Positions 7,860 to 63,514 of a stretch of DNA of 64,000 nucleotides are shown piece after piece. How positions within the stretch are numbered: the first letter of the stretch is position 1; every line of letters begins with the position of its first letter. A program made the position numbers and the translations under genes. This DNA comes from Styela clava (taxonomy: Eukaryota). The notes under the pieces are model-generated. The model was not told the DNA's origin and searched no databases. It saw nothing but the letters and a program-made list of their open reading frames with translations. The stretch is from the NCBI RefSeq assembly GCF_964204865.1, contig NC_135264.1:10974001-11038000 (forward strand). The letters are read 5' to 3'.

Positions 7860-10800
7860 TTATTTTGAAAGCATTGACGTTGACGAGAAGGTTGGAACAC
7901 CAGTGCTGCCAGTATCACGCGCTGTAACAATATTTACCGACGAAGGCTTTCGTGTTATTCTTCGTCTTATAGAAGCTCTAACTTCTACGGTTTTATTAAA
8001 AAGAGCCGCTCGAGCAATAGAAAACCCACTCGAGTAAATGATTGGATTCAATGAACTATTTATGGGTAGCAGAAGAATCGCCGCCACAGCATACGCGTCC
8101 CCAGAGATATGCGCTCCAAGTTGGCTTGCGAGAGCCATAATGCAAATTGGAAGCCAGCAGCAGAGATCAGTTGCAATTAAAATCGTTATTTTTCTTTGCA
8201 TTGCTCGACTTCGATTTTCGTGTGTAGTTTCGCTGCCCACGACTTCATTGTGTGTGGACTTGTGGTAAATCTTACAGTATGCAATGATGATAAACATCAA
8301 GCTACAGAAATTTAGGCTTATTATGAACAAGGATAGTGCATGTAGAGGCAGCTCTCCTTTTATTCTAAATAGCCTAGGAATGCATACCCCGTCGGCACTG
8401 TAGAAGCCAAAGTATCCGAGCACTTCAGGAGCAACATCTGCATAGGTATTTTTCAGAATATCTTCAGCGCTCCCCCAAGTGTTAAAGTCGTTTGATGCGT
8501 GAGATGCACGGGCTCCGAGAACAACAATTCGTTGTGCAAATGTTTTGAAATCATCCCAAGATACGACTGTGTTTTCAAGGTACATCGACGGTCTTGTTAG
8601 TGCTGTAGTAACCGTGGTTTGATTAATCGATGGAATAATTGGGGTTAAGGCTAATATAATAGACAATGCCCATGTTGTAATTGCTGTCACGACAGCCCAT
8701 TTCGGTTTTGCATGTCTGCTTTGAAACGGTCGGTGAATTCCATAAAAACGATACACAGTCAAAGCTACGAGAGAAAACACGGATGTTTCACTGGACAAAA
8801 CAGTCATAACTCCAATTGCGTTACATAGTCCACTCATCCGCCATTTTTTGTCTTCCAAACAATATTCTCCAGACATTGAAACTGACTTCACTCCTATTAC
8901 AAGCAGTGTTACCCCCATGAGAAAGTCAGAAAATGCAAGATTCATAATTAATATCCTGTTGCAACGACTCATTGAACTTGATTGAGACTTGATTTCGGAG
9001 TAATAGGTTTCTATTATTACACCTATGTTACCAAGAATTGCTATACATGCCATGAACCAAATGAAATGCCGAAGAAATGGTAGTTTAATCATTTCCTCTG
9101 GGGAAGATAGTGGGTTTTCGTCGTTCCAATTATCTGGGCATTCGTCTGAATTGTCGTCACAGTCCTGTTTACCGTTCATTACTGATGAATATGGAATGTA
9201 AAGAGGGTTCCCGTCTTTACAATAGAAGTGAGTCAACTTACTGCAATTTCTTTCGTCTGACTGATCTAGGCAGTCTGGATGTAAATCGCACACTTTAGTG
9301 GGTTTGATGGCGATACGCTGAAACGAAGTACGTAAATGTAATTTAATATAACGCATTAAGAAAAGTAGCTATTAACAAATAACAACATAAGGATATTTAC
9401 GATGTATTCTATCACTCTTCAGATAAAGGTAAATGACAAACGATTGTGTATATAAGCCAAATTTATGTTAGCAAACAAATATCTATTTTATATTTAGGAA
9501 TGGTATATCACTGTTCAACTTGATGTAAAACAAAATCAGCAAAGTATACCAACCTGTCTTGTACCCAAAGGTGATTCTACAGTCCCGGCGTCGCACTTAA
9601 AATTTTCTGTGCAGTTTTGTTCATCCTCCCCGCCGTTACATTCTTGTATGCCATCGCATATGGATCGACCAAACACAAAGTTGGTGTAATCGTACCTATT
9701 TTCCGTAGTCGCATAATCGATGCATCTGCAAAAATAATTTCCATAGTTTTAATATTTTGGATAGATATATATATAAAATATACGAAACGAAGAGCTAACT
9801 TACGTCCGTACTTCCATTGCTACTTTTGCCCCGATGATTGATTCCCTTGGACTAATGTTTTTCAGTTGAAATGTTTCGCATTCTGGCATCTGACATTCTT
9901 CATTGCATTCATCCTCAAATCGTGGACAATCAAAAACGCCGTCACATCTTGTTGGTTAAAATTTTTAATGCTATCATATGTGAATACGATAACGATTGTT
10001 AAGGCAGAAACTTAGGGTAGGTGTGACAATGCCACTTTTACTTAGCGCTAGCGCAATAATATCCAAGTACAAGAGAGCGATGCTCAAATATATGGACACG
10101 AAGTGGTACCGGTCACACAATAGCCTACTGGTACCGTGTCGCAGCTGAGCAACAGATTTGAACTTACACGAAAGCGGGACCGCCACATGGAGGGGACTTT
10201 TAAATTTTGATGGCGTCTTCGCACACAAAAAACGAATCCCATAGGATAGGGCCTAGAGGTCACAAAATATTTGAGATAAATAAAAGTAATGGTCTTAATA
10301 ATTTTGAAGCAATTGGTCCAGTAGTTAATGAGAGAAGCGATTCTTTCGCAACAAGAAGAAGTCGAGAAATACGAGCATGATGAACAACAACAAAATAAGA
10401 AAACGATTCATAGGTTCATTTCGTGTCCAATAATTTAAGTAAAGCACTCAGATTCAATGAAGTATGATGAGATTGCTAGTAATTCAGAAAGAATTAGGAA
10501 AGCAAATATATATAAATTTTATTCATTATTGATTGCCATTGCCATCAACTTATAGAACTGTATTTCCTCGGGGAAGGATTTTATCTTTCAGATGATACGA
10601 TATATATACCCATAATCTACTTACTTTGTACCGTCTGTTGCATATATATTTTCGTATATTTCCATTAGGTTGAAAGCTTTCAATACATTTAATATGGCGT
10701 CGCTGATTTTCCAACATTTAAAATCGGTCGTATTTGATTTTAAACCGACTTCTGCTTCTGGTTGAACGCATAATTTTTCATCAAGAGCAGAAATTGTACA

Positions 10801-13318
10801 ATCTATAACACCGTCACATATTTTAAAGCGATTCACGCACATTTTGTCTTCTTTGCAATATAATTCTCCAGTTCGACAGTTGTTTTCACAATTTCCAGCG
10901 TTGTAGCAAATTGAATCGCAGAATTTCATTAGATTGGTGTTGTTGCGGTTCGAATTACAAAGGCATTCATCTGATAAATCTGTGCAGTCAATGACGCCGT
11001 CGCACATTTGTCGTCGTGCTATAATTTTGTTATCGGAGACGCAACGTGCGCAATTAAAGGACCCATTCTGGAAACATAAGTCCGATTTATCTTCGCACAG
11101 AGTGTGGTTATCGTACAGTGTCCATTGTGGTATGTTACACATTTCTTCCTTTGTTCCCAGAACAGTCTTTTTACATTCAAATCCTGGCAAATATTGAGGA
11201 TTGTCCTTCCCCGCTGGACAATCTCGGAATCCATCACACGCGTATGACTGGGGTATGCAAATTGATGGGTCATGAGGGCACCTCCACATACGTGCTTCAT
11301 TGCATCCTTCTATTTCATCGCTACAATCTCCACAGTGATCCATTCCATCACATAAATATTTTAACGCGATGCATCTTCGCCCGCTGTGACAACGAAATTC
11401 GTTCGATGAGCAAGTTTGATTCCAAGATATCACTTCATCACTTCCGTCTTTACAATTTTCAACTCCGTCTACAACCCAAGACCGCGGGATACATCTTCCA
11501 CTATCATTGCAACGAAATTCTGTTGTAGTTACGCATTGGGTTAAGTTTTTTCTTTCGTCAGCACCATTTTCGCAATCTGGATGGCCGTCCTTCACACGAA
11601 ATCGTTTTACACACTGCCCGTTGTCACATCGGAATTCTGCAGATTCGTTGCAAGAACTGAACGGTTCATTTTCATCTTCACCAGTTTTGCAATCATTCAT
11701 TTTATCAAAAACCCATTCTCTAGGAATACACCTCCCATTAGAACACTTGAATTCAGTTTCATTGCAATAATCAAGTGACGCCATTTCATCGCTGTCGTCA
11801 TCAACTTCGGTAGTTTTGCAATCGATGTTGCCATCTCTCACAACCCATCTCGGCAAACATAGCCTGCTGTGCTTGCATGTAAATTCTGAGTAAATAAGTT
11901 GACTATATACTAAAATTGATTACCGGTGAAAAAACTTCGTAAAATAATCGTTTTATGTGAAGAAAATATTAAACGATACAAAGGATGATTCCGTACACAG
12001 TATGGGCATTGAATAAAAACCGTTTTTACCATGTTCTGATGAACTGCATGATTTATTATTTTAGACAAACTTAATGCGTCAAAGCTGGCGTGTTTCATAT
12101 GATTATTATGAACCACATGTTTACATCCACACTGGAAAGCAATTGTTAGCTAGTAGCAAATTCAATTATATCCAGTTTTTGTTGAAGTTAGTCAAGTCAC
12201 GATTTTATTGAAATTAGTTATAGAGGAATTACAGCTCGATAATAAAGTAAACATACAACTTCATACTCTTTGCCTTAATACAGTTTCTTGATAAATATAA
12301 AAGGCACATAATATAAAAAACTTCGGAAGTGATAAGCAAGTTTGGCAAGTTTTCCATATTAAACTGCCTTTAACAAAATGGCGATACTGTATATTTACAA
12401 TGTACCATCGGATCTGCATGGCAAAGTGATGACTCCCTTTTTCCCCAGAAGACAGCCTTGCTTGGTCCCTAGCAACATTCTTGGTATACATCGGTTTATC
12501 CCGCGACATGCAAATTCATCATCTGTACAATTCACCCTTTCTGTTATGTACAAAAATATGAATGTATTATATCGCCACTTATTACACCATATGTTACCGT
12601 TTACTCTTTCTGGAAGTGGATTTGTTGATATCAGGTCCGAGAAATATAGATACAGGTAGGCCTACCTCACATCTACCATGGTTATTTCAGACTTCTTTAT
12701 TTTATGAGAATTGGGGTTCTGATTTCAGTATAGTTTGTTCCATTGATACAAAATATATGGACCGAGCTCACTCTACCAATTTATTTATATTCCCCGTTAT
12801 ATTTTCACATACCACTCCGAAAACAGGCGTGTTAGAATATGAAGTATAACCGAATAATTCTTTTAAAAATGCGCTTGAAAAAAAAACAGGCTTAATGCTG
12901 ACCTTTCTCGCAATAAGTTTTAAATACACCATCACGCCTTTGACATCGTCCGGTTAAAGAACACCTGTGATAACCATCTTCTATTCGACAGCCCGCGCGA
13001 AGTCTTCGTACGTTCAGAGAGTTGACTTTGACTGCAAAAACACCACGTTTTGCAAATTACTAATGGCTGAAAAAGTTTGTAATGCGGAGCTACAGATGAA
13101 AAATTTAAAATACTATTGAAGGTACGATCTTTGGATAAAAGACGTTTCGAAATATCGCTGGTTCGACTGTTATCCCAGCCCACTACCTTTTATCAAGAGA
13201 CAGCATGAAAGTACAACTGAATCTCTTTACTGGGTTTTGCAGGTCTACCAAACTTACCATAAACATTGATGCTGTGTAGAACAACTATATATAAAAGTAA
13301 CTTATAGAAACAAAACAT
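7860..13318 (-). CDS. LDLa-repeat GPCR copy A (GRL101/RXFP-like 7TM, no LRRs), 1119 aa
   Basis: Exons 13318-13258 (signal peptide MFCFYKLLLYIVVLHSINVY), 13031-12903, 12540-12406, 11885-10625, 9947-9804, 9725-9554, 9317-7860 = 3360 nt in frame, all GT-AG. About 13-15 LDLa-like modules. 7TM motifs GN (TM1), NLAFSDFLMG, FYSADGVC, TDLCCWLP, PINSSLNPIIY. Confidence 0.93.
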
Positions 13319-14288
13319 ATTGCAACCGCCTCTGCTGCTTAAAAGACAATCTGACGTTAGATTCTCAGCCTATTATATTTGGAAATTTTCGGACGTGACG
13401 GGGTGTAATATAAGGGTCGGAAGTCTCGAGAGCATGAGTCAACTCAAGTCTTTTTCGCTTGCCTTGATGTAAACTACAAATGCAAATTTGAATAAACTTA
13501 TTCACTACACGCTGACTCAGTGTATCAATACAAAATCATGGTACTGTAGTTGATTACATGAAAATGTGTTCAACTGAATTGGCGTGCTGTAAAAAACAAC
13601 CATAAAGCTCTATATTACATTGCGGTACTAACAGAACAATTATGTTTTCATAAAATCAATCATTTTCATTTCATTATACACTTTTATCTTGCTGAATTAA
13701 ATACAAAATAAAGAGCCTCTTGAATAATTGCCCTATTACGTCAAATAATGAGGAGAAGGAATTTCACATCAATTTTTACCCTCCACCAAACACGCAATTT
13801 CATAGATCGTAAGCGAACAATTACGCTCCTCATGTCATAACGTGACATCCCATCAACAGCAAGGCTCTACCAACGTACATGTAGAATGTGATCCAGATGT
13901 TTCTCATCGAAAGTTTAAAATGAAGGACGGCGGAATTGAAACGTTGATGCTACCATGCCACACACTTGAATCGAATCTTGAAATTAAACATGCGGTAACA
14001 AGTAGGCTTAATGCGCTTGGAAGATTTCATTACTCGCCGGTCAACACCTATATTCATTATGAATGCTATGCATAAGAATTCCACATTTAGAACAAGAAAA
14101 ATATTAAAATCACTGATGACAAAATGCATTTAAATATTAATTTTCTCGATTAAATATAAAAATTATCCTCTGTCGCTTCACGCATATATAATACATCGAA
14201 CATCATAAGTTTTATGCTCGAAATGAGTTCTTGATTTCCAGTAACATTTTATACAAGGCACACGGAGTTTGCAATGCTGTTAGCGAAA

Positions 14289-17200
14289 CTACTGTTGTAC
14301 AGTAGATATACTTGCTAATTTTGAAGGCATTGACGTTGATGCGAAGGTTGGAACACTTGTGCTGCCAGTATCGCGCGCTGTAACAGTATTTTCCAAGGGA
14401 GGTTTTCGTGTCATTTTTTGTCTCATAGAAGCTCTAACTTCTACGGTTTTATTAAAGAGGGCAGCTCGAGTAATGGCAAACCCACTCGAGTATATGATCG
14501 GATTTAATGAACTATTTATGGGTAGAAGAAGAATCGCCGCGACAGCATACGCGTCCCCAGAGATATGCGCTCCAAGTTGGCTTGCAAGAGCCATAATGCA
14601 AATTGGAAGCCAGCAGCAGAGATCAGTTGCAATTAAAATCGTTATTTTTCTTTGGATCGCTCGACTTCGATTCTCGTGTTTAGCTTCGCTGCCCTTGACT
14701 TTCCTATGCGTGGACTTGTGGTAAATTTTACCGTATGCAATGATGATGAACATCAAGCTACAGAAATTTAGACTTATTATGAACAAGGATAGCGCGTGTA
14801 GGGGCAGCTCTCCTTTTATTCGAAATAGCCTAGGAATGCATACTCCGTCAGCACTGTAGAAGCCAAAGTATCCGAGCACTTCCGGAGTAACATCTCCGTA
14901 GGTATTTTTTAGAATATCTCCTGCACTACCCCAAGTGTTAAAGTCGTTTGATGCTTGAGATTCACGGGCTCCAAGAACAGCAATTCGTTGTGCAAAAGTT
15001 TTGAAATCATCCCAAGATACGACTGTGTTTTCAAAGTACATTGACGGCCTTGTTAGTGCTGTAGTAACCATGGTTTGATTAATCGATGGAATAATGGGGG
15101 TTAAGGCTAATAGAATAGACAATGCCCATGTTGTAATTGCTGCCACGACAGCCCATTTCGGTTTTGCATGTCTGCTTTGAAACGGTCGGTGAATTCCATA
15201 AAAACGATACACAGTCAAAGCTACAAGAGAAAACACGGATGTTTCACTGGACAACACAGTCATAACTCCAATTGCGTTACATAGTCCACTGATCCGCCAT
15301 TTTTTGTCTTCCAAACAATATTCTCCAGACATTGAAACTGACCTCACTCCAATTACAAGCAGTGTTACCCCCATGAGAAAGTCAGAAAATGCGAGATTGA
15401 TAATTAATATTCTGTTGCATCGACTCAATGCACTTGATTGAGACTTGATCTCGGAGTAATAGGTTTCTATTATTACACCTATGTTACCAAGAATTGCTAT
15501 ACATGCCATGAACCAAATGAAATGCCGAAGAAATGGTAGTTTAATCATTTCCTCTGGGGAAGATAGTGGGTTTTCGTCGTTCCAATTATCTGGGCATTCG
15601 TCTGAATTGTCGTCGCAATCTTGTTTACCATTCATTACTGATGAATATGGAACGTAAAGTGGGTTCCCGTCTTTACAGTAGAAGTGAGTCAAGTTACTGC
15701 AATTTCTTTCGTCTGACTGATCTAGGCAGTCTGGATGTAAATCGCACACTTTAGTGGGTTTGATGGCGATACGCTGAAACGAATATGTACGTAAATGTAA
15801 TTCACTATAACGCATCAAGAAAAGTAGGTATTATCTAACAACAACATAAATGTATTCTATCCTATACTCTTCAGATCCGGGTAAATTTGTAATGACAGCC
15901 GCTTGTGCATTTAAGCCAAATATGAGAGGGCGCGAAAATTAATTTTAAGTTTCGAGTTGCTGATATCAGACAGAATCTTTATTTTTTCCAGTCACCAACA
16001 CACTACTCACTACAATAAAAACTTCCTACGTAAACATTATTCATAACCAAAAGCGCGCTCTGCTCCGATCAAATTTCTGTTGGCAGACAAATATCTAAAT
16101 TATATTTATGGATGATATATCATTATTTAGACTCTATGTAAAACAAAACACGTAAAATATACTAACCTGTCTTGTACCCAAAGGTGATTCTACGGTACCA
16201 GCGTCGCACTTAAAATTTTCTGTGCAGTTTTGTTCATCCTCCCCACCGTTACATTCTTGTATGCCATCGCATATTGATTGGCCAAAGACATAATTAGTGA
16301 AATCGTACGTATCTTTTGTTGTCGCATATTCGTTACATCTGCAAATATATTTTCCTTGAGTGTTTATATTTTCAATAAAATTTATTCACGAATATGATGA
16401 GCTAACTTACGATCGTAATAACATTGCTGCATCTACCCCGACGATTGATGCCATTAGTCCAATGTTTCTCAGTTGAAATTTTTTGCATTCTGGCATCTGA
16501 CATTCATCATTACATTCATCCTCGAATCGAAGACAATCAAAAACGCCGTCACATCTTGTTGGTTAAAAACAATTTTAATGGTATCATATTATGCGAACAC
16601 GATTGTTTAATCAGAGATGCCATCTCTTAAATATCGTACAACACTTAATTAGGAACATGTATCCAAATTATTCACAATATCCTAATATATGCGGAGTGAA
16701 GCACTCAGATTCATTATAGTACGGCGAGATTTCTAGTAATTCGCAAAGAATTCAGAAACCAAATATAAATTTTATTCATTATTATTCAATTATTGTACCA
16801 CCTTGTGGAATTATAGTTCCGTAACAAAAAAACTATCGCGGGAAAAAATTCACCTTTTCAGATAACTAAATTATTTAAAATACGATATGCTCATATTATA
16901 CTTACTTTGTACCGTGTGTTGAAAACAAATTTTCGTATAGTTCCATTAATTTGAAAGCTTCCAATACCTTTAACATGGCTTCGCTCAATTTCCAACATTC
17001 AAAATCGGTCGTATTCGATTTTAAACCGACTTCTGCTTCTGGTTGAACGCATAATTTTTCATCAAGGGCAGAAATTGGACAATCTATAACACCGTCACAT
17101 ATTTTAAAGCTATCCACGCACATTTTGTCTTCTTTGCAATATAATTCTCCAGTTCGACAGTCGTTTTTACAATTTCCAGCGTTGTAGCAAATTGAATCGC

Positions 17201-19570
17201 AAAATTTCATTAGATCGGTGTTGTTGCGGTTCGAATTACAAAGGCATTCATCTGATAAATCTGCGCAGTCAATGACTCCGTCGCACATTTGTCGTTGTGC
17301 TATAATTTTGTTATCGGAGACGCAACGAGCGCAATTAAAGGACCCATTCTGAAAACATAGGTCCGATTTATCTTCGCACAGAGTGTGGTTATCGTAAAGT
17401 GTCCATTGTGGTATGTTGCACATTTCTTCCTCTGTTGCCAGAACGGTCTTTTTACATTCAAATCCTGGCAAATATTGGGGATTGTCCTTTCCCCCTGGAC
17501 AGTCTCGGAATCCATCACATGCATATGCTTGTGGTATGCAAATTGATGGATCATGAGGACACCTCCACATACGTGCTTCATTGCATCCTTCTATTTCGTC
17601 GCTACAATCTCCACAGTGATCCATTCCATCACATAAATATTTTAACGCGATGCATCTTCGCCCGCTGTGACAATGAAATTCGTTCGGTGAGCAAGTTTGA
17701 TTCCAAGATATCACTTCATCACTCCCGTCTTTACAATTTTTAACTCCGTCTACAACCCAAGACCGCGGGATACATCTTCCACTATCGTTGCAACGAAATT
17801 CCGTTGTAGTTACGCATCGGGTTAAGTTTTCTTTTTCGTCAGCACCATTTTCGCAATCTGGATGGCCGTCCATCACACGAAATCGTTTTACACACTGCCC
17901 GTTGTCACATCGGAATTCTGCAGATTTGTTGCAAGAACTGAAAGGTTCATTTTCATCTTCACCAGTTTTGCAATCATTCATTTTATCAAAAACCCATTCC
18001 CTAGGAATACACCTCCCATTAGAACACTTGAATTCTGTTTCATTGCAAAAAGCTAGAGACATCATTTCATCGCTGTCGTCATCAACTTCAGTAGTATTGC
18101 AATCGATGTTGCCATCTCTCACAAACCGTCTCGGCAAGCATAGCCTGCTGTGCTGGCATGTAAATTCTGAGTGAATAAGTTGACGATATATTAAATTTGA
18201 TTATCAATGGGACAGAAATCGTAAAACGATCGTTTTTCTCGAAAAAATAAAATACTAAACAATACAAAGGATAATTCATAGTGTGGACATTGAGTAGAAA
18301 CCGACGTCATCAATGGAAGAAGAAGCTCGTATTTAGTTTTTACCATGTTCTGACGAACTGCGTGAGTAAGAAAACTTCGATGCGTCAAAACTGACGTGTT
18401 TGATATGATTGTTATGAACCACATGCTTACATCCACACTGAAAAGCAATGGTTAACTCTAATAGAAAATTCAATCACATTCAATTTCTTGTTCAAATTCG
18501 CGATTTTATTGAAATCAGTTGTTCAAAAAATACAGCTCAATAATAAAGCAAACATACGACTTCATACTCTCTGCCCCGATACAGTTGCTTGCTAATTATA
18601 ATAGTCACATAATATGGAAAACGTTGGAAGTGGAAGCAAGTTTGGTAAGAAAGGATCACTCACTGACTTGAACTAGATAGGGGGTTAGTGTATTTTAGAA
18701 AATTACAATATTTAAACAATGTACCATCGGTTCCGCATGGTAAAGTGATGACTCCTTTTTTTCCCAGAAGACAGCCATTTTTGGTCCCCAGTAACATTCT
18801 TGGTATACATCGGTTTACCCCGCGACATGCAAATTCATCATCTGTACAATTCACCCTTTCTGTTTTGGGAAAAAATATGAATACATTATATCGTCGCACA
18901 TAACAACATATTTTACCGTTTACTCTTTCTAGAAGTGAATTTGTTGATAGAAGGTTTGAGACATAGAGATACATGTACCATTCACATCTACCATGGGTAT
19001 TTCAATCTTCTTGGGGCTCTGATTTCAGTTTATCTTCTATTAATACAAAATATACGCCTATAACAAGCGCCGATAATGCTCTGTGTTAAGGTAGAATTTT
19101 AATTATAATCGAGTAATTCTATTAAAATGGTGCAATTAAAATTCTGGCTAGATGCTGACCTTTCTCGCAAAAAACTTTAAATACATCTTCACGTCTTTGA
19201 CATCGCCCGTTTAAAGAACATCTGTGATAACCATCTTCTATTCGGCAGCCCGCGCGAAGTCGTCGTACGTTCAGAGAATTGACACTGACTGCAAAAATAC
19301 CACACATTCGCAAATTTATAAGGCTGAAATAAGTTTGTAATGCGAAACTAGAGTTGGAGAATTTAAAATGCTATATAGGATAACCGATAATATTTTCTAA
19401 ATATCGCTGTGTTTCGACTATTATTCCATCCCATTACGCTTAATTAAAGAACAGTATAAAAGTAAAACTATTTCTCTAACTGTGTATCATGCGTCTATAC
19501 CAAACTTACCATAATATTTGATGTTATGTAGAATAACTATATATAAAAGAAACTTATAGAAACAAAGCAT
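14289..19570 (-). CDS. LDLa-repeat GPCR copy B, tandem duplicate of A, 1128 aa
   Basis: Exons 19570-19510, 19288-19160, 18859-18725, 18166-16906, 16554-16411, 16338-16167, 15773-14289 = 3387 nt in frame. Exon sizes equal copy A except the last. Confidence 0.93.
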
Positions 19571-26730: not shown

Positions 26731-27220
26731 GGTCTTTTGCTTATTCTGAATAATCTTGGAATACAGACCCCATCGGCGCTGTAGAAGCTGGGAGCAAAGT
26801 CCTTGTACATATTTTCCAACATATTACGTGCATTCTTACAAGTTTCAAAGGTTGTTGGTATTTTATTTACGCAACGTCCAAGAACAGCAATCCGTTTTGC
26901 AAAAATTGTGTAGTCATTCTATGATACGACAGTGTTTTCAAAGTACATTGATGACCGTGTTAGTGCTTCGAGTACCATGGTTTGATTAATTGTCAGAATC
27001 GGAGGCAACGCAGCTAAAATAAAAGACAAGCTCCACATTGTAGTCACTGCAACGATAGCCCATTCAGGTTTTACATTTCTGCTTTGAAGTGATCGATGAA
27101 TCCCATAAAAGCTATCCATGGCCAAGACAACCAGAAAAAAAACGCATGTTTCACCGCGCTAATGCTGTCATAAGTCCAATCGCATAAACCACTGATTTGC
27201 CATAGTTTGTCCTTTAATAC
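26731..27220 (-). pseudogene. Decayed 7TM-exon fragment of a fifth LDLa-GPCR (C/D type)
   Basis: The minus strand encodes recognisable YGIHRSLQSRNVKPEWAIVAV...SMYFENTVVS* (TGG>TAG) and FYSADGVCIPRLFRIS, with deletions. The adjoining 26520-26730 is an inverted match to the 3' flank of copy D (~63750-63960). Confidence 0.9.
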
Positions 27221-34200: not shown

Positions 34201-34896
34201 TACAGAATTTTTGCAGAACGAATTGCTGTTCTTGGACGCCGTGTAAATAAAATATCAACAAACTTTGAAACTTGGAAGAATGCACGTAATATGTTGGAAA
34301 GTATTTACAAGGACTTTGCTCCCAGTGTACTCGGTTACTTTGGCTTCTATAGCGCCGATGGGGTCTGCATTCCAAGATTATTCAGAATAAGCGGAAGACC
34401 GTCTCTCCACGCGTTATCTTTGTTTATAATAACTCTGAATTTTTGTATCCTGCTGTTCATCATCATTGCTTATTGTAAAATATACCACAAGTCAACAAAT
34501 AGAAAAGTCAAGGGCAGTGCAACAAAGCACGATAATCGGAGTACAGTAATGCAAAGAAAAATCACAATACTAATTGCAACGGATCTGTGCTGTTGGCTTC
34601 CGATTTGCGTTATGTCTATAGCAAGTCAAGTTGGAACGAACTTCTCGGGAGACGCATATGCCGTTGCTGCGATTCTTCTGTTACCAATCAACAGTTCACT
34701 AAATCCTATTATATACTCAAGTGGTTTTGCCATTGCCCGAGCAGCTCTTTCTCACAGCACTGTCGAAGTTCGAGCTTCTATCAGACGCCGTCTAACGCGA
34801 GAGCCTGATCCGGAATTACAGCAAGATATCGCAATGCATGAAAGTGGGAAAACAGGCGTCCAGTCGCTGTCTTCAACATCAGCACTCAATACTTAG
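28225..34896 (+). CDS. LDLa-repeat GPCR copy C, 1118 aa
   Basis: Exons 28225-28276 (MCSFIKFLLLCYNVAIL), 28937-29059, 29752-29886, 30867-32133, 32719-32856, 32972-33140, 33424-34896 = 3357 nt in frame. Same intron positions and phases as A/B. Confidence 0.92.
28335..28642. mobile_element. MITE in intron 1 of copy C, with a degraded counterpart in intron 1 of copy D (~56672-57060)
   Basis: TIRs CAGGGCTGGGGAG / CTCCCCAGCCCTA and internal ggagc/gctcc motifs. Confidence 0.65.
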
Positions 34897-36380: not shown

Positions 36381-36437
36381 AGACGAGCTTAATACATATA
36401 TATATATATATGTATGATATTTATTAGGCCATTGATG

Positions 36438-56549: not shown

Positions 56550-59500
56550 ATGTGCTGTTTTTTTAAATTTCTTCAGTATCTTCTTCTCTATTATAATGTC
56601 GCAATTTTGGGTAAGTTGGTTATATACACCGGGGTGTATTTATAATTTACCTGGGTATCCTATGGTTAACACCAGGGCTAGGGAGCAAGTTAGACATAAT
56701 GGCTCCGGGGCCTCGGTATATACAACTCAAGTCTCCATCACCAGCGCTTCATATTTGTGCTGGAGTTCCGAATCCTTGGCCATTGATGTTGATGACCATA
56801 AACTTTAGCCCGAATTTTAAAAAGTTTCTTCGGAGTTTATATATCCAAATTCAACTTCGAACTTATAAAATAAAATTAGAAATCAAGTTAAAAAAAAATG
56901 AAGCTGAAAAGGAAAGAGTGATTTAAATGTATAAAATAAACAATTAGATAGTTAAGAGCTGGAGCCACTGAAATTTCTGGTAGCTTGGGCTTAATCTATT
57001 TTGTCAACCCTGGTTCCAGCTCAGTCAAAATGTCACGTTTCCCCGACCCCGCAGTCCAGGTGGATACAAAATAATAATGGAAAATTTCAATTGTGACATT
57101 TGTACCATTTTAAAAATTGAACAATCAAAAAATGAAGCAAAATATTCCGTGGGGATTTGACTCCCTTGGTTAAATAATTCGTATGATATATTATTCATAG
57201 TGGGGTGACGAGTTTACTCTTTTCTTACTATGTACACATTTCTAGGTCGTTATCATTTGTTTTACCTAAAGCAAATTCATTCTTATTCATCATCGGACGA
57301 ACTAAAACCGTTCAGTCGAATAGTTGTTTTTTTATTTTTTGCATTTTTCACAGTAAATTCTCTAAATGTACGAAGGCTTCGTCCAGGTTGTCGAATTGAA
57401 GATGGCTATCACATATGTTCTTTAACTGGACTCTGTCAAAAACGAGATGGTGTTTTCGATGATAGGTGCGAGAATGGTCAGTATCAAATTGTAATTTTAT
57501 TCGGGAAAACAAGCAAATATTTGAAAAAAAAATTGATGATATGAATCGGCACTTTGCGTTATGGATCTTTCTACCGACCTAACTTTTATGTATTTCCAGG
57601 AACTATCAGTATGCTCACACATCTTGTCAGTATAATGACAATATATCTTTTGCTTGGGTAACTACAAATGTAATCAGTTACTAAAAGTAACCTATTTAAG
57701 AGGGTTAAAAACAACTATCACTTTCTTGGAACCATTCAGTTTGACTGGTTACTTTGAATTTCACGTATGCTTAGATTTGACATTCTCTTTATCGCCCACT
57801 CTCAATGCAGGTAATTAGATAATGTTTAATAAATATTGACCTGCTCAACGTGTGAGACTCCGAGTATAAAGAGGTTTTAGCGTAGGATAAATTTTCGTTG
57901 ACATATCGATAACTAAGCAATAGTACTAGTCCAATCTTTCTTCACATATTAAGTATTTATTATTCTGCATACATTGACAACCAATAGAAATGGAACACTT
58001 TTGTTCATTGTCAGTACCAAGGAAACCATTTGTTGCAAAATACTAGCACTACAAAACATTGAGAAATGCGCAAAATCGAATGATAAACAGTAACATAAAC
58101 ACCATTTAACAATAAATCTTATCACAGCAAGAGTGAATTGTACGGATGATGAATTTACTTGCCGTGGAGTCAATAGATGTATACCAAGAATGTTACTGGG
58201 AACAAAGAATGGTTGTCTTTTGGGGAAGAAAGGAGTCATCACTCTCCCATGCAGGCCCGATGGTAAAATATATCAGTATTTCACAATTACAGCGGTATAT
58301 ATGTTTACACTATTGTAACAAAGCGTCAATAAAATTAAATAAATATTCATTGGCAACGAAGTGAATATGTGTTCTCTTGAATATACAGCATATTTCACAA
58401 TTACAGCGGTATATATGTTTACACTATTGTAACAAAGCGTCAATTAAATTAAATAAATATTCATTGGCAACAAAGTGGATATGTGTTCTCTTGAATATAC
58501 AGCATATTTCACAATTACAGCGGTATATATGTTTACACTATTGTAACAAAGCGTCAATTAAATTAAATAAATATTCATTGGCAACGAAGTGAATATGTGT
58601 TCTCTTGAATATACTATACTGTTCAGTGTTCACACGTATGAAAGATTCAACGTAGGTCACATTTTGCCTTGTGTCTTTGGTAGCACTCACAAAAAAAATA
58701 CCCGACGTCACACATATCTTTTGTCACCTTGTGGGACAAGCGAACCCATGGATAATTTTGCTCAATCTTTAGCATTGTTCTGTTTTTTGTGAAATCATCG
58801 TTTTTTTTCCAACTAATGGGCAGTCGATTTTGCTGTAAGGCTATTACTTCTATTTTTACAATATGTTATCTGAGTTATACGGGTCCCAATATTTAATCGC
58901 AAATTTTACTGGTTTTGAAAAATTCACGACAAACCTACATATGATTTCGGAGGAGTACTTATCGCGATTCTTCAAGTGGAATTACGCTTGCATCGCAGAG
59001 GCCGTGTACGTCATTTGAACTTGGGGTCTAATGGTTTCAAATCGCTCGGTAGTTGTGGATTGGCCTGGTAAAATTAGTAAACAATCTCAGAATAGCTTAA
59101 TTAAACGACGAAGAATAAAATTAATCTAGTAGTGCGTAGTTCTCTGCTTCTAATATTATCGGATCGACATACAGAACGTGGTTCACCTGCTAATACAAAT
59201 AGGGCCGACTTTAACTATTGCTAGGACCACACCAATAGGGAATGCGCAATCTGCAGGGCCCATCCTGGACACCGATAAAAATATTACGCGAAAAATTGAG
59301 ATTTTGTAATTAAAAATGAATCATAGTTTATTTTTCATCACCTTTTATCCAAGTATAAAATCACGGTTAAATGTAACGTTTATATGCACATATAATATAT
59401 GAGAATTTGCTTCTAAACAAGGATGTATATTAGAGATTCTAAATCACCATACGGTCGTTTTAATATATATATTTTTTTATATATTGTATTCAGAATTTAC

Positions 59501-62500
59501 ATGCCGATACAGCAGGCTATGCCTGCCAAGGTGGGCAGTGATGGACGGTAACGTAAATTGCGAAACTACCGAAGTTGTTGACGACAGTGACGAAATGGCA
59601 TCTCTCAATTCCTGCAGTGAAAGTGAATTCAACTGTACCAACGGAAGATGCATTCCCAGAGAATGGGTTTTTGATAAACATGACGATTGCAAAAATGGTG
59701 AAGATGAAATTGAACCTTTCAGATATTGTAACAATGCTGAAGAATTCCGATGTGACAACGGACAATGTGTAAAAAGATATCGAGTGAATGACGGCCATCC
59801 AGATTGCGAAAATGGTGCTGATGAAAGAAAACAGTTAGCGAAATGCATAACTACGACAGAGTTCCGTTGCAATGATAGCGGAAGATGTATTCCGCGCAAT
59901 TGGGTTGGGGACGGAGTCAAAAATTGTAAAGATAGCAGCGATGAAGTGATATTTTGGAATCAAACTTGCTCAACAAAAGAATTTTCTTGTCACAACGGGC
60001 GTCGATGCATTTTGTCTAAATATTTATGTGATGGGATGGATCATTGTGGAGATTGTAGCGATGAAATAGAAGGATGCAAAGAAGCACGAATGGTGAGGTG
60101 TCCTCTCGACTCATCAATTTGCATACCACAGTCCTACGCCTGCGATGGATTCCAAGATTGTCCAAAAGGAATCGACAACCCACAATACATGCCTGGTTTT
60201 AAGTGTAAAAAGACTGTCTTAGCAACAGAAGAAGAAATGTGTAATATTCCTCAATGGACATTACATGATAATCACACTATGTGCGAAGACAAATCAGACT
60301 TATGTTTCAAGAATAATTCATTTAATTGCGCTCGTTGTGTATCTGACAACAAAATAATAGCGAAACGTCAAATGTGTGATGGCGTCATTGATTGTACAGA
60401 TTTATCAGATGAATGCCTTTGTAATTCGAACCGAAATAACGTCGATTTGATGAAATTGTGCAATTCAATTTGTTATCATTCTAACAAATGTGGTGATCTT
60501 AACAACTGCCGAGTCGGAGAGTTGTATTGTGATACGAGCAAAAAATGTTTAAGCCTTTCAAAGGTGTGTGATGATGTTGTGGACTGTCCAATATCAGCGA
60601 TTGACGAGAAACTATGCATTCAGCCTGACAAGGATGTTGTTGCAATACACAACACTACTGATTTTGATTGTTGGAAAGTTTCAGATATCATTTTGGAAAT
60701 AGTAGAAACTGCAAATCTTATGGAACTTTTCAACAATCTATATTCAACGCACGGTAAAAAGTATGTAAATTTCCTAAAATTCCAAAAGCGAAAATTATCC
60801 GATATCCAAATTCAGTGATTTATTAGAAAAATAATATCAATACCTCATTACTTGTATAAAATTCGAATGCTTCGTGGTGTCAAAGACCAATTTCAGATAC
60901 TTTTCTTCATCATTGTTCTAACCAGGATATCATTAATTTGATAATTTTTGTGGTTCCAGTGAAGGACTTGTGATGATTTGTTGGACTCAAAATATACCTA
61001 TGGATCGGTTTTTTTACTTGTTTTTGTAATGGAAAATTACTTTTCTCCGCATGTAACACACCAATTGATCTCAATTTTTCAGTACGTAAAGATGAAAATA
61101 GTCACCAGAAGGCTATTAATAATTTTTCTCTGAATTCTACATGGTCTTAAAACTAACCATAAATTTAACTGGTTTTTGTTCTCACGAAGACAACACCTTG
61201 AGTAAAATCCCTTTACCAACTCGAATGACGATTTCTCTTAACACTGCGGTGGCTTAGTTACTTTGCCTTTGTGTCCATATATCCAAGTATTGCTTTTCTC
61301 ATTTATTTTTGTGTTACAAGGTGTGACGGTGTAATTGATTGTGCTCGCTTCGAAGATGAATGCAATACGGAATGTTATCTGCCAGAATGCGATAAATTTC
61401 AGCTGTTAGAAATACCGTTCAATGAGTTCATTTTTGGAGGAGTAGTAGAAAAAGTCCGGGCGTAAGTGACGATTTCGATATCTCGTACTCTCTTCGAAAT
61501 GTTTGCCAACTTACAGTATTGTTTCAATGCGACAAACCAAAATGTACCTACCTTCAAATCTTTAGCATTGTTTTCGACAGATGCAGTGATTATGTGACGG
61601 AAAGTGGTTACGATTATACAAACTTTGTCATCGGAGAGTCAATATGCAATGGAATCAAAGATTGTACAGACGGTGCCGATGAACAGAATTGCACAGATTT
61701 TTTCAAATGCAACGCTGGTACAGTAGAATCACCACTTGGCACAAGACAGGTTGAATTCTCATTAAAATCTTTACAAATGTATTTAATTACAAACCTTTTA
61801 ATATCTATGGTACAAGTCGTGTAAATGGTGTAACTGAAAGTAGTATGTATCCGACAAGTAGCAAACGGCATTTTAGTGGCACCGTAGTGAGTTCACGCGA
61901 GCTTGTTTCTCCAATATAAATCCATTTAATGAATTTGAACAAAACTATCTGATCATAAATATGAATTACCTGGTGATATTCCCAAATTAGTGCAACTCAC
62001 TTTTGTTAATTTTGAATCCACTTTTTTCCATTTTTTAGCGCATTGCCGTAAACAAAGACAAAGTATGTGATTTACAATTAGACTGCTTGGATCAATCAGA
62101 TGAAAAAAGCTGCAATGATTCGACTCATTTTTATTGCAAAAGCGGAAGCCCTCTCTTTGTTCCATTCTCATCAGTAATGAACGGCAAACAAGACTGCGAA
62201 GACAACACCGACGAATGTCCAGACAACTGGAATGACCTAAACCCGTTATCTTCGCCAGAAGAAATGATTAGACTTTCGTTTCTCCGTTATTTCATCTGGT
62301 TTATGTCATGTATCGCAATTCTAGGAAACCTCGCCGTTATTATAGAAACTTGTTACTCTGAATTTGGCTCACAGTCTAGTGCGCAAAGCCCAATGAGTCG
62401 ATGTAACAGAATACTGATAATAAACCTGGCAATATCTGATTTCCTCATGGGGGTCACCTTGCTTATAATTGGAATTAAGTCAGCTTCAATGTCCGGCGAA

Positions 62501-63514
62501 TACTGTTTAAAGGACAAACAATGGAGGATCAGTGGTTCTTGTAACGCAATCGGAGTTATGACAGTATTATCCAGTGAAACATCCGTGTTTTCTCTGGTTG
62601 TCTTGACCATGTATCGCTTTTATGGGATTCATAGACCGTTTCAAAGCAGGAATGTAAAACCAAAATGGGCTATCGTTGCAGTGATTATAACGTGGACCTT
62701 GTCCTTTATTCTAGCTGCGTTGCCTCTGATTCCTTCAATTAATCAAACTATGGTACCAGAGGCACTCACACAGCCATCAATGTACTTTGAAAACACTGTC
62801 GTATCATGGGATGACTACAGAATGTTTGCAGAACGAATTGCTGTTCTTGGACGCCGTGTAAATAAAATATCAACGAACTTTGAAACTTGGAAGAATGCAC
62901 GTAATATGTTAGAAAGTATTTACAAGGACTTTGCTCCGAGTGTACTCGGTTACTTCGGCTTCTACAGCGCCGATGGAGTCTGTATTCCAAGATTATTCAG
63001 AATAAGCGGAAGACCGTCTCTCCACGCGTTGTCTTTGTTTATAATAAGTCTGAATTTTTGTATCCTGCTGTTTATCATCATTGCTTATTGTAAAATATAC
63101 CATAAGTCAACGCATAGAAAAGTCAAGGGCAGTGCAACAAAGCACGATAACCGGAGTAGAGTAATGCAGAGAAAAATCACAATTCTAATTGCGACGGATC
63201 TGTGCTGTTGGCTTCCGATTTGCATCATGTCTATAGCAAGTCAAGTTGGAACGAACTTCTCGGGAGACGCATATGCCGTTGCTGCGATTCTTCTGTTACC
63301 AATCAACAGTTCACTAAATCCTATTATATACTCAAGTGGTTTTGCCGTTGCCCGAGCAGCTCTTTCTCACAAAACTGTAGCAATTCAAGCTTCTATCAGA
63401 CGCCGTATAACGCGAAAGCCTGATCCGGAATTCGAGCAAAATAACATCGCAATGCATGATAGTGGGAAAACAGGCGTGCAAACGCTGTCTCCAACATCAG
63501 TACTCAATTCTTAG
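56550..63514 (+). CDS. LDLa-repeat GPCR copy D, 1123 aa
   Basis: Exons 56550-56610 (MCCFFKFLQYLLLYYNVAIL), 57354-57476, 58128-58262, 59494-60760, 61321-61461, 61581-61749, 62039-63514 = 3372 nt in frame. Closest to copy C. Confidence 0.93.
58277..58616. repeat. 3 x 114-bp near-perfect tandem repeat in intron 3 of copy D
   Basis: tatttcacaattacagcgg... starts at 58277, 58391 and 58505. A single diverged counterpart is in intron 3 of copy C (~29905-30005). Confidence 0.92.

What the first reader, a model, noticed from the sequence alone, without database searches (positions are those of the whole stretch)
7860..63514. Cluster of four intact LDLa-GPCRs that have lost the entire LRR domain
Seen: each gene goes directly from the last LDLa module (…KQDC.DN.DECPDNWND.NPL) into SSPEEMI and TM1, with no LxxLxLxxN repeats in any exon. 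Known: RXFP1/2 and molluscan GRL101 place LRRs between LDLa and the 7TM, and the LRRs are a main hormone-binding surface in RXFPs. The GRL101-type hinge SSCEDL has its Cys replaced by Pro in all four copies, as expected if its disulfide partner in the LRR cap is gone. The TM3 D/ERY position reads YRF. I recall LDL-repeat GPCRs being noted as an ascidian expansion, so the architecture may not be new, but I know of no ligand or function. A birth-and-death cluster suggests a recognition-receptor family (immune, chemosensory or gamete).
Basis: partly seen in the sequence, partly recalled or inferred. Interest (0 to 1): 0.75.

Follow-up and report, generated by a model that had tools for sequence, protein, structure and literature searches.

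The report
Sea-squirt LDLa receptors without leucine-rich repeats
The window holds four neighbouring copies of a sea-squirt cell-surface receptor that resembles the relaxin receptor but carries only LDL-receptor-type modules outside the cell; this receptor type was already described in another sea squirt in 2008 and its ligand is still unknown.

Summary
Four paralogous six-exon genes (two on each strand) each encode about a dozen LDLa modules. The last module runs within one exon into SSPEEMI, TM1 and a rhodopsin-class 7TM domain.

No LRR was found by Pfam, by a six-frame motif scan of all 64 kb, or by tblastn with LRR-bearing relatives. Spliced transcript contigs join exons 1 to 6 of gene 1 with GT..AG introns and no extra exon.

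The 7TM lies in the LGR family: RXFP1 is the best solved relative, then LHCGR/TSHR. It forms one clade (99/93) with Ciona and Clavelina LDLa-7TM proteins, nested among LRR-bearing receptors. So LRR loss is supported.

The architecture is not new. Kamesh et al. 2008 (PMC2396169) named it LDLRR-GPCR in Ciona. This scan also noted a fifth copy just outside the window (s1-823157).

Three changes travel with the LRR loss: no hinge Cys, no acidic residue before R3.50, and a structured ECL2 lengthened by about 65-70 residues. RXFP1's ECL2 core and hinge residues are kept.

"Intact" is only partly shown. The first exon is unresolved, and one gene-1 contig is mis-spliced.

Function remains inferred.

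The parts
12903..13031 (-). Gene 1 exon 1 (Cys-rich, start of the ectodomain). The 3' border comes from a transcript joint; the 5' border is inferred from a conserved YAG.
   Evidence: Joint 12903|12540; conserved acceptor; conserved block.
12406..12540 (-). Gene 1 exon 2 (LDLa-like half module).
   Evidence: Joints 12903|12540 and 12406|11885; Pfam LDLa E 0.022.
10625..11885 (-). Gene 1 exon 3 (large LDLa array).
   Evidence: Joints; Pfam Ldl_recept_a 1.9e-46, 7 stretches, no LRR.
9804..9947 (-). Gene 1 exon 4 (second half of an LDLa module plus a variable insert). The conserved in-frame acceptor is at 9947; the one observed contig uses 9970 and is out of frame.
9554..9725 (-). Gene 1 exon 5 (LDLa halves).
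   Evidence: Joints 9804|9725 and 9554|9317; Pfam LDLa E 0.0011.
7860..9317 (-). Gene 1 exon 6: end of one LDLa module, last LDLa module, hinge SSPEEMI, 7TM with long ECL2, C-tail, stop.
19160..19288 (-). Gene 2 exon 1 (5' border inferred).
18725..18859 (-). Gene 2 exon 2.
16906..18166 (-). Gene 2 exon 3 (LDLa array).
16411..16554 (-). Gene 2 exon 4.
16167..16338 (-). Gene 2 exon 5.
14289..15773 (-). Gene 2 exon 6 (last LDLa, hinge, 7TM, stop). This is the protein that was modelled.
26742..27152 (-). Decayed fragment of a 7TM exon (TM3 to ECL2), with an in-frame stop and a small deletion.
28225..28276 (+). Candidate first exon of gene 3: ATG, 17 mostly hydrophobic codons, donor GTAAGT, phase fits exon 1. 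Inferred only; the element is repeated nearby.
28937..29059 (+). Gene 3 exon 1 (5' border inferred).
29752..29886 (+). Gene 3 exon 2.
30867..32133 (+). Gene 3 exon 3 (LDLa array).
32719..32856 (+). Gene 3 exon 4.
32972..33140 (+). Gene 3 exon 5.
33424..34896 (+). Gene 3 exon 6 (last LDLa, hinge, 7TM, stop).
56550..56610 (+). Candidate first exon of gene 4 (same element as in gene 3, 9 nt longer, same phase). Inferred; coordinates approximate.
57354..57476 (+). Gene 4 exon 1 (5' border inferred).
58128..58262 (+). Gene 4 exon 2.
59494..60760 (+). Gene 4 exon 3 (LDLa array).
61321..61461 (+). Gene 4 exon 4.
61581..61749 (+). Gene 4 exon 5.
62039..63514 (+). Gene 4 exon 6 (last LDLa, hinge, 7TM, stop).

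Best explanation
What it is (shown). This is a tandem/inverted cluster of paralogues of the tunicate 'LDLRR-GPCR' family. These are rhodopsin-class receptors whose 7TM descends from LGR-type (relaxin-receptor/GRL101-like) receptors. Their ectodomain is an array of about a dozen LDLa modules with no leucine-rich repeats. The last LDLa module, the short hinge and the whole 7TM lie in one exon. The genes are under purifying selection, and at least gene 1 is transcribed and spliced.

History (inferred from the tree). The LRR block was lost once, in the ancestor of this clade. The same branch also lost the hinge Cys that LRR-bearing relatives keep, lost the acidic residue of D/E-R-Y, and gained a structured insertion of about 65-70 residues in ECL2.

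How it most likely works (inferred, about 35-40% for the whole chain). The Ca2+-type acidic LDLa modules bind a large protein or lipoprotein ligand through basic patches. Binding repositions the membrane-proximal LDLa module against the hinge and the enlarged ECL2. The RXFP1-type ECL2 core (aromatic pair ... G-V-C-hydrophobic-P, disulfide to TM3) and the hinge (hydrophobic-S-S-x-x-E-hydrophobic-hydrophobic) then act as the built-in agonist switch, as in RXFP1. Signalling goes through the retained R3.50, CWxP and NPxxY. In RXFP1 the LRR/hinge holds this switch in check. Here the ECL2 insertion and the adjacent LDLa module would have taken over that role.
For: Architecture:
- Pfam gives LDLa + 7tm_1 and no LRR.
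- LRR motif scan and tblastn are negative while the controls are positive.
- An LRR_8 + 7tm paralogue (L011) is detected in the same genome by the same method.

Transcripts: GT..AG joints link exons 1-2, 2-3, 3-4, 4-5 and 5-6 of gene 1, with 1-2 contigs each from 3 of the 4 runs laid; the fourth, X9, showed none.

Selection: dN/dS is 0.13-0.29 for the LDLa exon and 0.10-0.21 for the 7TM exon, over all six pairs.

LGR affinity:
- phmmer against PDB: the top ten are TSHR, a C. elegans LGR, RXFP1, LHCGR and FSHR (E 8e-24 to 1.5e-18); the next class A receptor is at 9e-10.
- Family profile: RXFP1 194.5 bits (its LDLa stretch adds only 5.9), LHCGR 161.9, TSHR 159.3, LGR4 88, non-LGR receptors at most 65.
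- Foldseek: every listed chain down to rank 29 is an LGR.

Clade:
- 31 long-ECL2/LRR-less rows form one clade, 99/93. They include named Ciona intestinalis, C. savignyi and Clavelina proteins.
- The sister is LRR-bearing L011 (98/94).
- The other ingroup clade holds 22 GRL101-like rows, 13 of them with Pfam LRRs. A Trichoplax LRR receptor is basal.
- The same topology holds with the ECL2 and hinge columns removed (SH-aLRT 92 and 90).

Co-changes:
- Hinge Cys 0/31 against 23/23; acid at 3.49 0/32 against 26/27; ECL2 75-93 against 10-17 residues.
- Among the 150 best of 443 representatives at E<=1e-30, 115 of 121 readable rows show all three derived states, and all 6 rows with the Cys have Asp.
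- 0 of the 48 long representatives that were scanned have a Pfam LRR; 47 of 48 have LDLa.

RXFP1 switch residues:
- The alignment puts window F-Y...G-V-C-I-P-R on RXFP1 Y556-Y557...G561-V562-C563-F564-P565-L566, and L-S-S-P-E-E-M-I on I396-S397-S398-L399-E400-N401-L402-L403.
- F564, P565, L566, I396/S397 and L402/L403 are the residues shown by mutagenesis to control RXFP1 signalling (bioRxiv 10.1101/2022.01.22.477343, sections 6 and 7 read; passages of 10.64898/2026.06.10.731386).

Model: AlphaFold gives pLDDT 72.4 and pTM 0.72. It shows seven helices and an ECL2 with strands and two helices at pLDDT 66-85.

The ligand idea and the haemocyte ESTs come from Kamesh 2008, section 14.
Against: - No ligand, G protein, tissue or cell type was tested here. 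The runs are coded and are contigs only, and their RNA nature is the tool's guess.
- The first exon is unresolved, so a signal peptide is not shown.
- RXFP1 L566 is Arg/Lys in this family and F564 is Ile/Leu/Met, so the 'built-in agonist' may not work the same way.
- The LDLa modules of the model have pLDDT under 50, so no contact between LDLa and ECL2 can be read from it.
- The three co-changes sit on one branch of the tree. That is one event, not repeated evidence of coupling.
- The tree has no vertebrate type A/B/C sequences. L011 and the Trichoplax row are long branches, and the root rests on two dopamine receptors.
- Gene 1's only exon 3/4 contig is out of frame.
Confidence: 0.8

Rival explanations
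1. The genes are ordinary type C LGRs whose LRR exons were missed. They could lie elsewhere, in unassembled sequence, or be used only in some isoforms.
For: The first exon is unresolved. Each junction rests on only 1-2 contigs, and contigs drop rare variants.
Against: In LGRs the LRRs lie between the LDLa module and TM1. Here the last LDLa module, hinge and TM1 are in one exon in all four copies. All junctions from exon 1 to exon 6 of gene 1 are covered without an extra exon. There is no LRR signal anywhere in the 64 kb. 0 of 48 long family representatives have a Pfam LRR. Kamesh 2008 reports the same for 14 Ciona genes.
Confidence: 0.03
2. The proteins are mainly endocytic or scavenger receptors, or decoys. 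The LDLa array captures cargo as in LDLR/LRP, and the 7TM serves as an anchor or a constitutively active or internalising module rather than a ligand-gated switch.
For: The ectodomain is a large LDLa array like those of LRP2 and VLDLR (one search hits them at E 1e-56 to 3e-19). The acidic 3.49 residue is lost family-wide; in other class A receptors this loss often raises basal activity (general knowledge, not tested here).
Against: R3.50 is kept in 146 of 148 rows. CWxP, NPxxY, the TM3-ECL2 Cys pair and the LLPINS motif of TM7 are invariant or nearly so. TM segments have the lowest dN/dS, 0.05-0.10 in the old pairs. That is the pattern of a working signalling core.
Confidence: 0.12
3. The cluster is decaying: some or all of the copies are transcribed pseudogenes.
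For: There is a decayed fragment at 26742-27152. Gene 1's exon 3/4 contig is out of frame. No own first exon was found for gene 1, which starts only about 1.26 kb below the stop of gene 2.
Against: Exons 1-6 are open with intact splice sites and phases in all four copies. dN/dS is 0.20-0.29 even within the young pairs (dS 0.14-0.24), which shows constraint after the last duplications.
Confidence: 0.05
4. The family is a chemosensory or gamete-recognition repertoire rather than a blood-cell or immune one.
For: The family is large and shows lineage-specific tandem expansion: 443 representatives at E<=1e-30, with arrays on several contigs. The loop inserts of two LDLa modules are locally relaxed or variable, with pN about equal to pS in exon 4 of the G1/G2 pair and omega 0.9-1.3 at the end of exon 3.
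Against: Nothing here speaks on tissue. The one published hint is haemocyte ESTs in Ciona (Kamesh 2008). The counts in the variable stretches are small (nd 14-17, sd 2-5).
Confidence: 0.15

Closest known systems
Ciona LDLRR-GPCRs (Kamesh, Aradhyam and Manoj 2008, BMC Evol Biol 8:129, PMC2396169)
   Same: Rhodopsin-class 7TM most like relaxin/INSL3 receptors, 1-10 or more N-terminal LDL-A repeats, no LRR, tunicate lineage expansion. Named Ciona proteins (P0013, P0063) fall in the same clade as the window's genes.
   Different: Another ascidian; the nearest database protein is only 52-53% identical. Here there is a compact five-copy cluster with a transcript-supported six-exon structure. The ECL2 insertion, the hinge Cys loss and the D/E3.49 loss are not mentioned in that paper's main text (term searches; its supplements could not be opened).
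RXFP1/RXFP2 (type C LGRs)
   Same: Best solved relative of the family profile. Shares an LDLa module in the ectodomain, the short hinge motif, and the ECL2 core with the TM3-ECL2 disulfide.
   Different: RXFP1 has one LDLa module, a linker and 10 LRRs that bind relaxin, a short ECL2, and E-K-Y at the DRY position. Here there are about a dozen LDLa modules, no linker or LRR, an ECL2 about 70 profile positions longer, and Y-R-F.
GRL101-type receptors (many LDLa modules + LRRs + 7TM; named 'GRL101-like' in echinoderm and hemichordate records)
   Same: Multi-LDLa ectodomain. They are the nearest non-tunicate relatives of the 7TM.
   Different: They keep LRRs, the hinge S-S-C-E-D-L type Cys, D-R-F/L and a 14-15 residue ECL2. 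The Lymnaea GRL101 sequence itself was not available to me; what I say of it is recalled or taken from Kamesh 2008.
Glycoprotein hormone receptors (type A LGRs: TSHR, LHCGR, FSHR)
   Same: 7TM similarity nearly as high as to RXFP1 in single-sequence search. The hinge segment next to TM1 aligns with their P10 region (alignment).
   Different: They have LRRs plus a long hinge with Cys bridges, no LDLa module, E-R-W and a short ECL2.

Membership tests
LDLRR-GPCR (tunicate LDLa-only LGR-like receptors, Kamesh 2008) | Rhodopsin-class 7TM most similar to LGR/relaxin-type receptors | tested here: met
LDLRR-GPCR (tunicate LDLa-only LGR-like receptors, Kamesh 2008) | One to many LDL-A repeats in the N-terminal ectodomain | tested here: met
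   Pfam: 5-7 stretches in exon 3, two in exon 6, half modules in exons 2 and 5. My count by eye of Cys/acidic patterns in the translations gives about 12-13 modules.
LDLRR-GPCR (tunicate LDLa-only LGR-like receptors, Kamesh 2008) | No leucine-rich repeats | tested here: met
   Positive controls: P0088, P0089 and L011.
LDLRR-GPCR (tunicate LDLa-only LGR-like receptors, Kamesh 2008) | Groups with the Ciona members in a 7TM tree | tested here: met
   One clade of 31 rows, 99/93, holding Ciona intestinalis P0013 and P0063, C. savignyi P0017 and P0034, and Clavelina P0016, P0022, P0028 and P0053. The clade still holds with trait columns removed.
Type C LGR (RXFP1/2, GRL101) | LRR domain between the LDLa module(s) and the 7TM | tested here: not met
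Type C LGR (RXFP1/2, GRL101) | N-terminal LDLa module(s) | tested here: met
Type C LGR (RXFP1/2, GRL101) | 7TM in the type C clade rather than type A or B | tested here: inconclusive
   The profile scores RXFP1 194.5 against LHCGR 161.9 and LGR4 88. The single sequence scores TSHR 87.6 against RXFP1 85.0. No named vertebrate type A/B/C rows could be put in the tree.
Type C LGR (RXFP1/2, GRL101) | Relaxin/insulin-like peptide as ligand, Gs coupling | not testable with these tools
   Needs receptor assays.
Type A LGR (glycoprotein hormone receptors) | LRR ectodomain plus a long Cys-bridged hinge with the P10 Cys | tested here: not met
   No LRR. The hinge Cys is absent in 0 of 31 rows, meaning none has it.

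The most novel reading that the evidence does not exclude
In the tunicate stem, an LGR of the relaxin-receptor/GRL101 kind rebuilt its activation switch. It discarded the LRR hormone-binding and autoinhibitory domain. On the same branch it grew a folded ECL2 domain of about 65-70 residues, dropped the hinge disulfide Cys, and dropped the D/E of DRY. It kept RXFP1's ECL2 'internal agonist' core and hinge residues. The ECL2 domain plus the membrane-proximal LDLa module would now gate the receptor. The LDLa array would make the family (hundreds of diverged members) a G-protein-coupled sensor of large proteins or lipoproteins, possibly in blood cells. That would be a natural experiment on how RXFP1-type autoinhibition works.
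Probability: 0.3. Interest if true: 0.6.

Novelty: new member of a known kind. Interest (0 to 1): 0.4.

Why it matters
The LDLa-only LGR-like receptor is a published but still orphan tunicate family. No ligand, G protein or role has been shown since 2008: my searches of the held library found no later study of it.

This locus adds three things:
- A compact, transcript-supported gene model.
- Evidence that the family is large and constrained.
- A concrete, testable link to the recently solved RXFP1 mechanism: the residues that act as RXFP1's internal switch are kept, while the domain that restrains them is replaced.

If the mechanism holds, these receptors would be the first G-protein-coupled readers of LDL-receptor-type ligands, and a useful comparison for relaxin-receptor pharmacology. 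As a genome finding it is solid but not a surprise to a specialist.

Tried and rejected
First exon. An ATG/hydrophobic/donor scan in the right phase gave one good candidate for gene 3 and a matching one for gene 4 and the fifth copy. Nothing convincing turned up for genes 1 and 2. The element is repeated at 27740-27860 and 35480-35600(-), so I left it as a candidate.

Reference sequences for the tree. A second homology search with the 7TM of the LRR-bearing P0089 brought echinoderm and hemichordate 'GRL101-like' proteins and unnamed proteins, but no named vertebrate RXFP, GPHR or LGR4-6. The tree therefore lacks bona fide type A/B/C anchors. I used profile scores against solved structures instead.

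Rows dropped from the trees:
- P0109 and P0134 (under 200 residues in the cut).
- own_L012 (very long branch; it turned out to carry an LGR-type hinge, so it is a poor outgroup) and P0082 (near-duplicate of P0075).

Labels. Rows labelled as tunicate are known to be tunicate only where a source names them (Ciona, Clavelina). The ENA, JGI and Logan rows are unnamed.

Failed or poor steps:
- My LDLa regular expression matched nothing and is discarded.
- The exon 1 query was mis-framed and is ignored.
- Paper search was badly built (no listed paper held 'GRL101') and gave nothing.
- The Styela clava genome paper has no mention of GPCR or LDL.

The deep patch of contigs at 10069-10103 was considered as a small RNA or spliced leader. 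There is no Rfam or tRNA match, and the own-genome search shows a dispersed repeat of about 175 nt. I rejected the small-RNA reading.

Supplements of Kamesh 2008 (EST table, domain figures) were not opened. They bear on the haemocyte claim and on whether the ECL2 feature was drawn there.


Full report
WHAT IS THERE

The window (36% G+C, no N) holds four large open frames that Pfam reads as Ldl_recept_a followed by 7tm_1 (E 1e-23 to 1e-27). It also holds four open frames of 411-444 codons that are pure LDLa arrays with 5-6 Pfam stretches each.

DNA comparison of the four loci shows six conserved blocks per gene. Two genes lie on the minus strand (G1 7860-13031, G2 14289-19288). Two lie on the plus strand (G3 28937-34896, G4 57354-63514).

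All 24 exons are open. They are flanked by AG/GT and agree in phase. The spliced protein was neither built nor searched, and everything below is exon by exon.

TRANSCRIPT EVIDENCE

Contigs of four public runs were laid on 7800-13799. The tool guesses these runs to be RNA.

They give minus-strand GT..AG joints at 12903|12540, 12406|11885, 10625|9970, 9804|9725 and 9554|9317. Each joint is seen in one contig of one run or one contig in each of two runs.

Together the joints chain exon 1 to exon 6 of G1, and no other exon is spliced in.

One detail goes against a clean reading. The only contig across exons 3/4 uses an AG at 9970. That is 23 nt upstream of the acceptor that is conserved in all four copies (9947), and it puts a stop in frame. 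Contigs cannot show whether the in-frame form also exists.

The exon with the start codon was not settled. Exon 1 begins at a conserved acceptor with stops upstream. A phase-compatible ATG/hydrophobic/GTAAGT mini-exon is present upstream of G3, G4 and the fifth copy. The element is repeated nearby, and nothing comparable was found for G1 or G2.

NO LRR

Pfam finds no LRR family in any exon translation, even at E<=1 for the small exons of G1.

A six-frame scan of all 64 kb gives these counts:
- Strict LRR motif: 2 hits against 1.5 +/- 1.3 in 30 shuffles.
- Loose motif: 158 hits against 148 +/- 9.
- No three hits at LRR spacing.
The LRR-bearing relatives P0088 and P0089 give 7-8 loose and 2-3 strict hits each. 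Their LRR parts find nothing in the window by tblastn.

The method does see LRRs in this genome. A paralogue on another contig (L011) has LRR_8 (E 1e-18) and 7tm_1 in one open frame.

In LGRs the LRRs lie between the LDLa module and TM1. Here that stretch is continuous coding sequence within exon 6.

RELATIVES

The single exon-6 protein finds 92 proteins.
- The best is 52% identical.
- The named ones down to E 1e-58 are from Ciona intestinalis, C. savignyi and Clavelina lepadiformis. All have LDLa and/or 7tm_1 and none has an LRR.
- Echinoderm 'GRL101-like' proteins follow at about 1e-30.
- The first LRR-bearing hits appear at 1.7e-23 and 8.5e-14.

An exhaustive HMMER scan gives 443 representatives (50% clusters) at E<=1e-30.
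- From the best 150, I took the first 48 with lengths of 600-1400 residues. All 48 have 7tm_1, 47 have LDLa and 0 have any LRR family.
- By motif count, 2 of the 150 look LRR-bearing.

In the window's own genome there is a fifth copy 23.6 kb beyond the window end. Its 7TM is 99% identical to G4 over the kept tree columns.

The own genome also holds:
- a 52%-identical gene on another contig;
- at least eight further LDLa+7TM genes with a single 7TM exon;
- arrays of members with a split 7TM on two other contigs.

PLACEMENT

Against solved structures, the ten best sequence matches are all LGRs: TSHR, a C. elegans LGR, RXFP1, LHCGR and FSHR, at E 8e-24 to 1.5e-18. The next receptor is at 9e-10.

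A profile of 20 family members scores as follows:
- RXFP1 194.5 bits, of which the LDLa stretch gives 5.9
- LHCGR 161.9
- TSHR 159.3
- FSHR and the nematode LGR 138.8
- LGR4 88
- other class A receptors at most 65

An AlphaFold model of the G2 exon-6 protein (pLDDT 72.4, pTM 0.72) has seven confident helices. In Foldseek every listed chain down to rank 29 is an LGR.

In a careful IQ-TREE tree (58 rows, 365 columns):
- The LGR-like ingroup is split from three amine-type receptors by a 100/100 branch.
- The 31 LRR-less rows form one clade (99/93).
- Its sister is the LRR-bearing L011 (98/94).
- The other ingroup clade has 22 GRL101-like rows, 13 of them with Pfam LRRs. Most of the rest are short models.
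- A Trichoplax LRR receptor is basal.

With the ECL2 and hinge columns removed, the clade and its sister remain (SH-aLRT 92 and 90, quick search).

Loss of LRRs is therefore the parsimonious reading. Three caveats apply: L011 and Trichoplax are long branches, the outgroup is distant, and no named vertebrate type A/B/C sequence could be included.

WHAT CHANGED WITH THE LOSS

In the 62-row alignment:
- Hinge position aligned to the Pro of SSPEEMI: Cys in 23 of 23 LRR-bearing or GRL101-like rows and in 0 of 31 LRR-less rows.
- Residue before R3.50: acidic in 26 of 27 relatives (the exception is L011, Thr) and in 0 of 32 LRR-less rows (Y, F, L, I, V or S).
- Stretch from the end of TM4 to the ECL2 Cys: 75-93 residues in the LRR-less rows against 10-17 in the relatives (0 in the partial model P0134, which lacks this stretch).

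In the wider set, 121 of the 150 representatives can be read at all three places:
- 115 show all three derived states.
- All 6 rows with the hinge Cys have Asp at 3.49; in 2 of these 6 the ECL2 length could not be read.
- 2 short fragments are odd.
- R3.50 is kept in 146 of 148 rows.

These changes lie on one branch, so they count as one event.

The ECL2 insertion is conserved in length. It has an invariant Trp and other conserved positions. It is modelled with strands and two helices at pLDDT 66-85. It evolves under constraint, more loosely than the helices: dN/dS 0.25-0.32 against 0.05-0.10 in the old pairs.

LINK TO THE RXFP1 MECHANISM

HMMER aligns the family's hinge and ECL2 core to RXFP1. 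After adding 1 to the chain numbering to match the numbering of the paper:
- Window L-S-S-P-E-E-M-I falls on I396-S397-S398-L399-E400-N401-L402-L403.
- Window F-Y-S-A-D-G-V-C-I-P-R falls on Y556-Y557-G558-T559-N560-G561-V562-C563-F564-P565-L566.

Erlandson et al. (bioRxiv 10.1101/2022.01.22.477343; abstract and sections 6 and 7 read) report the following:
- ECL2 fills the orthosteric pocket.
- F564A, L566D and a change at P565 cripple signalling.
- L402/L403 are essential.
- The ectodomain inhibits this switch until relaxin binds.

Passages of a 2026 preprint (10.64898/2026.06.10.731386) add that the hinge loop (P391-S405) is the ECD-TMD interface and contacts ECL2.

The tunicate family keeps the aromatic pair, the Cys, the hydrophobic residue and the Pro, and the hydrophobic pair of the hinge. 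It has Arg/Lys in place of L566.

My reading is that the RXFP1-type internal switch is retained, and that its restraint has passed from the LRR/hinge to the new ECL2 domain and the adjacent LDLa module. This is inference. The model's LDLa modules are below pLDDT 50, so it says nothing on contacts.

EVOLUTION OF THE CLUSTER

G1/G2 and G3/G4 are young pairs (dS 0.14-0.18 and 0.16-0.24). The two pairs are old relative to each other (dS 1.1-1.6, near saturation).

dN/dS is 0.10-0.29 in both large exons for all six pairs. All four copies have therefore been under purifying selection.

Two stretches are relaxed or variable, though the counts are small:
- The loop insert at the end of exon 3: omega 0.9-1.3, nd 10-14, sd 2-3.
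- Exon 4 in G1/G2: pN 0.155 against pS 0.162.
The C-terminal tail is also variable.

A decayed piece of a 7TM exon lies at 26742-27152. Tektin exons and a weak UNC-93-like match separate G3 from G4.

This fits birth-and-death turnover.

WHAT IS KNOWN

Kamesh et al. 2008 (PMC2396169; passages and section 14 read) described 14 Ciona 'LDLRR-GPCRs'. They report:
- 1 to 10 LDL-A repeats, no LRR, and TM regions like the INSL3/relaxin receptors.
- Clustering with LGRs in 999 of 1000 NJ trees.
- Most EST hits coming from blood/haemocytes. The table is a supplement that I could not open.

Their main text has no 'ECL2', 'DRY' or 'hinge', and its 'extracellular loop' occurrences are in reference titles on the PTH receptor.

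Searches of the held library found no later functional study of the family. They found no paper linking tunicate LDLa receptors to ECL2. One search was poorly built, and subscription journals are not covered.

VERDICT

The thing is a new member (a new species' cluster) of a known, orphan receptor family.

What this follow-up adds:
- The transcript-supported gene structure.
- The size of the family and the constraint on it.
- The single-branch package of changes: LRR loss, hinge Cys loss, D/E3.49 loss and ECL2 domain gain.
- The retention of RXFP1's switch residues.

Interest is moderate.

Noticed in passing
window 10069-10245: A dispersed repeat of about 175 nt sits in intron 3 of gene 1. The own-genome search gave 706 first-look candidates, of which 40 were scored at 75-83% identity. 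Contigs of all four runs pile up on 10069-10103 (summed depth 900-2500) with varied flanks. There is no Rfam or tRNA match. It looks like a SINE/MITE-type element carried in many transcripts.
   Followed up: partly
window 9947-9970 (-): In gene 1, the only transcript contig across exons 3/4 uses an AG 23 nt upstream of the conserved acceptor, giving a frameshift and a stop. Gene 2 lacks that AG. This may be an unproductive isoform or a sign that gene 1 is failing.
   Followed up: partly
window 26742-27152 (-): Decayed fragment of a 7TM exon of the G3/G4 type (TM3 to ECL2). It is 57% identical to G2, with an in-frame stop and a small deletion.
   Followed up: yes
window 27740-27860, 28195-28300, 35480-35600 (-), 56230-56320, 56520-56640; L001 890-941 and 1279-1387: A repeated element holds an ATG, 17-20 mostly hydrophobic codons and a GTAAGT (GTGAGT in the copy at 35480-35600) donor in the phase that exon 1 needs; the copies at 56230-56320 and L001 890-941 match only its first part. 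It is a candidate first exon/promoter unit of the G3/G4/fifth-copy lineage, with extra solo copies, one of them inverted just downstream of gene 3.
   Followed up: partly
window 13536-13799: One run (X9) has a contig at depth 27.6 here, between gene 2's stop and gene 1's exon 1. The other three runs have none. It could be the 3' UTR of gene 2 or an unrelated transcript.
   Followed up: no
window 42162-43228 (+) and 52107-52400 (+): Two Tektin-family exons (E 1.7e-22 and 6.8e-21) and a weak UNC-93-like match (E 0.0011, below the Pfam cut-off) lie between genes 3 and 4. The receptor cluster is therefore interrupted by unrelated genes.
   Followed up: partly
L011 2452-4467 (-) (own genome, contig C9): An LRR_8 + 7tm_1 receptor in one open frame. 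It keeps the hinge Cys and a short ECL2 but has Thr-Arg at the DRY position. It is the sister of the LRR-less clade in the trees (long branch), so it may be a transitional form.
   Followed up: partly
L014 2974-6464 and 9781-9972; L015 7066-7335 (own genome, contigs C2 and C13): Members of the same LDLa-7TM family with the 7TM split over several exons, in tandem arrays (many TM7-exon matches at 58-65% identity at C2 17.49-17.57 Mb and C13 5.22-5.25 Mb). The genome-wide family is well above the 15 or so loci I characterised.
   Followed up: partly
window 10625-10720 and 9804-9870 (-), and the same places in the other copies: The loop inserts inside two split LDLa modules (end of exon 3, second half of exon 4) change mostly at the protein level between the young paralogues (omega about 0.9-1.3; small counts). 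This is the subject of another note of this scan (s1-809874).
   Followed up: partly
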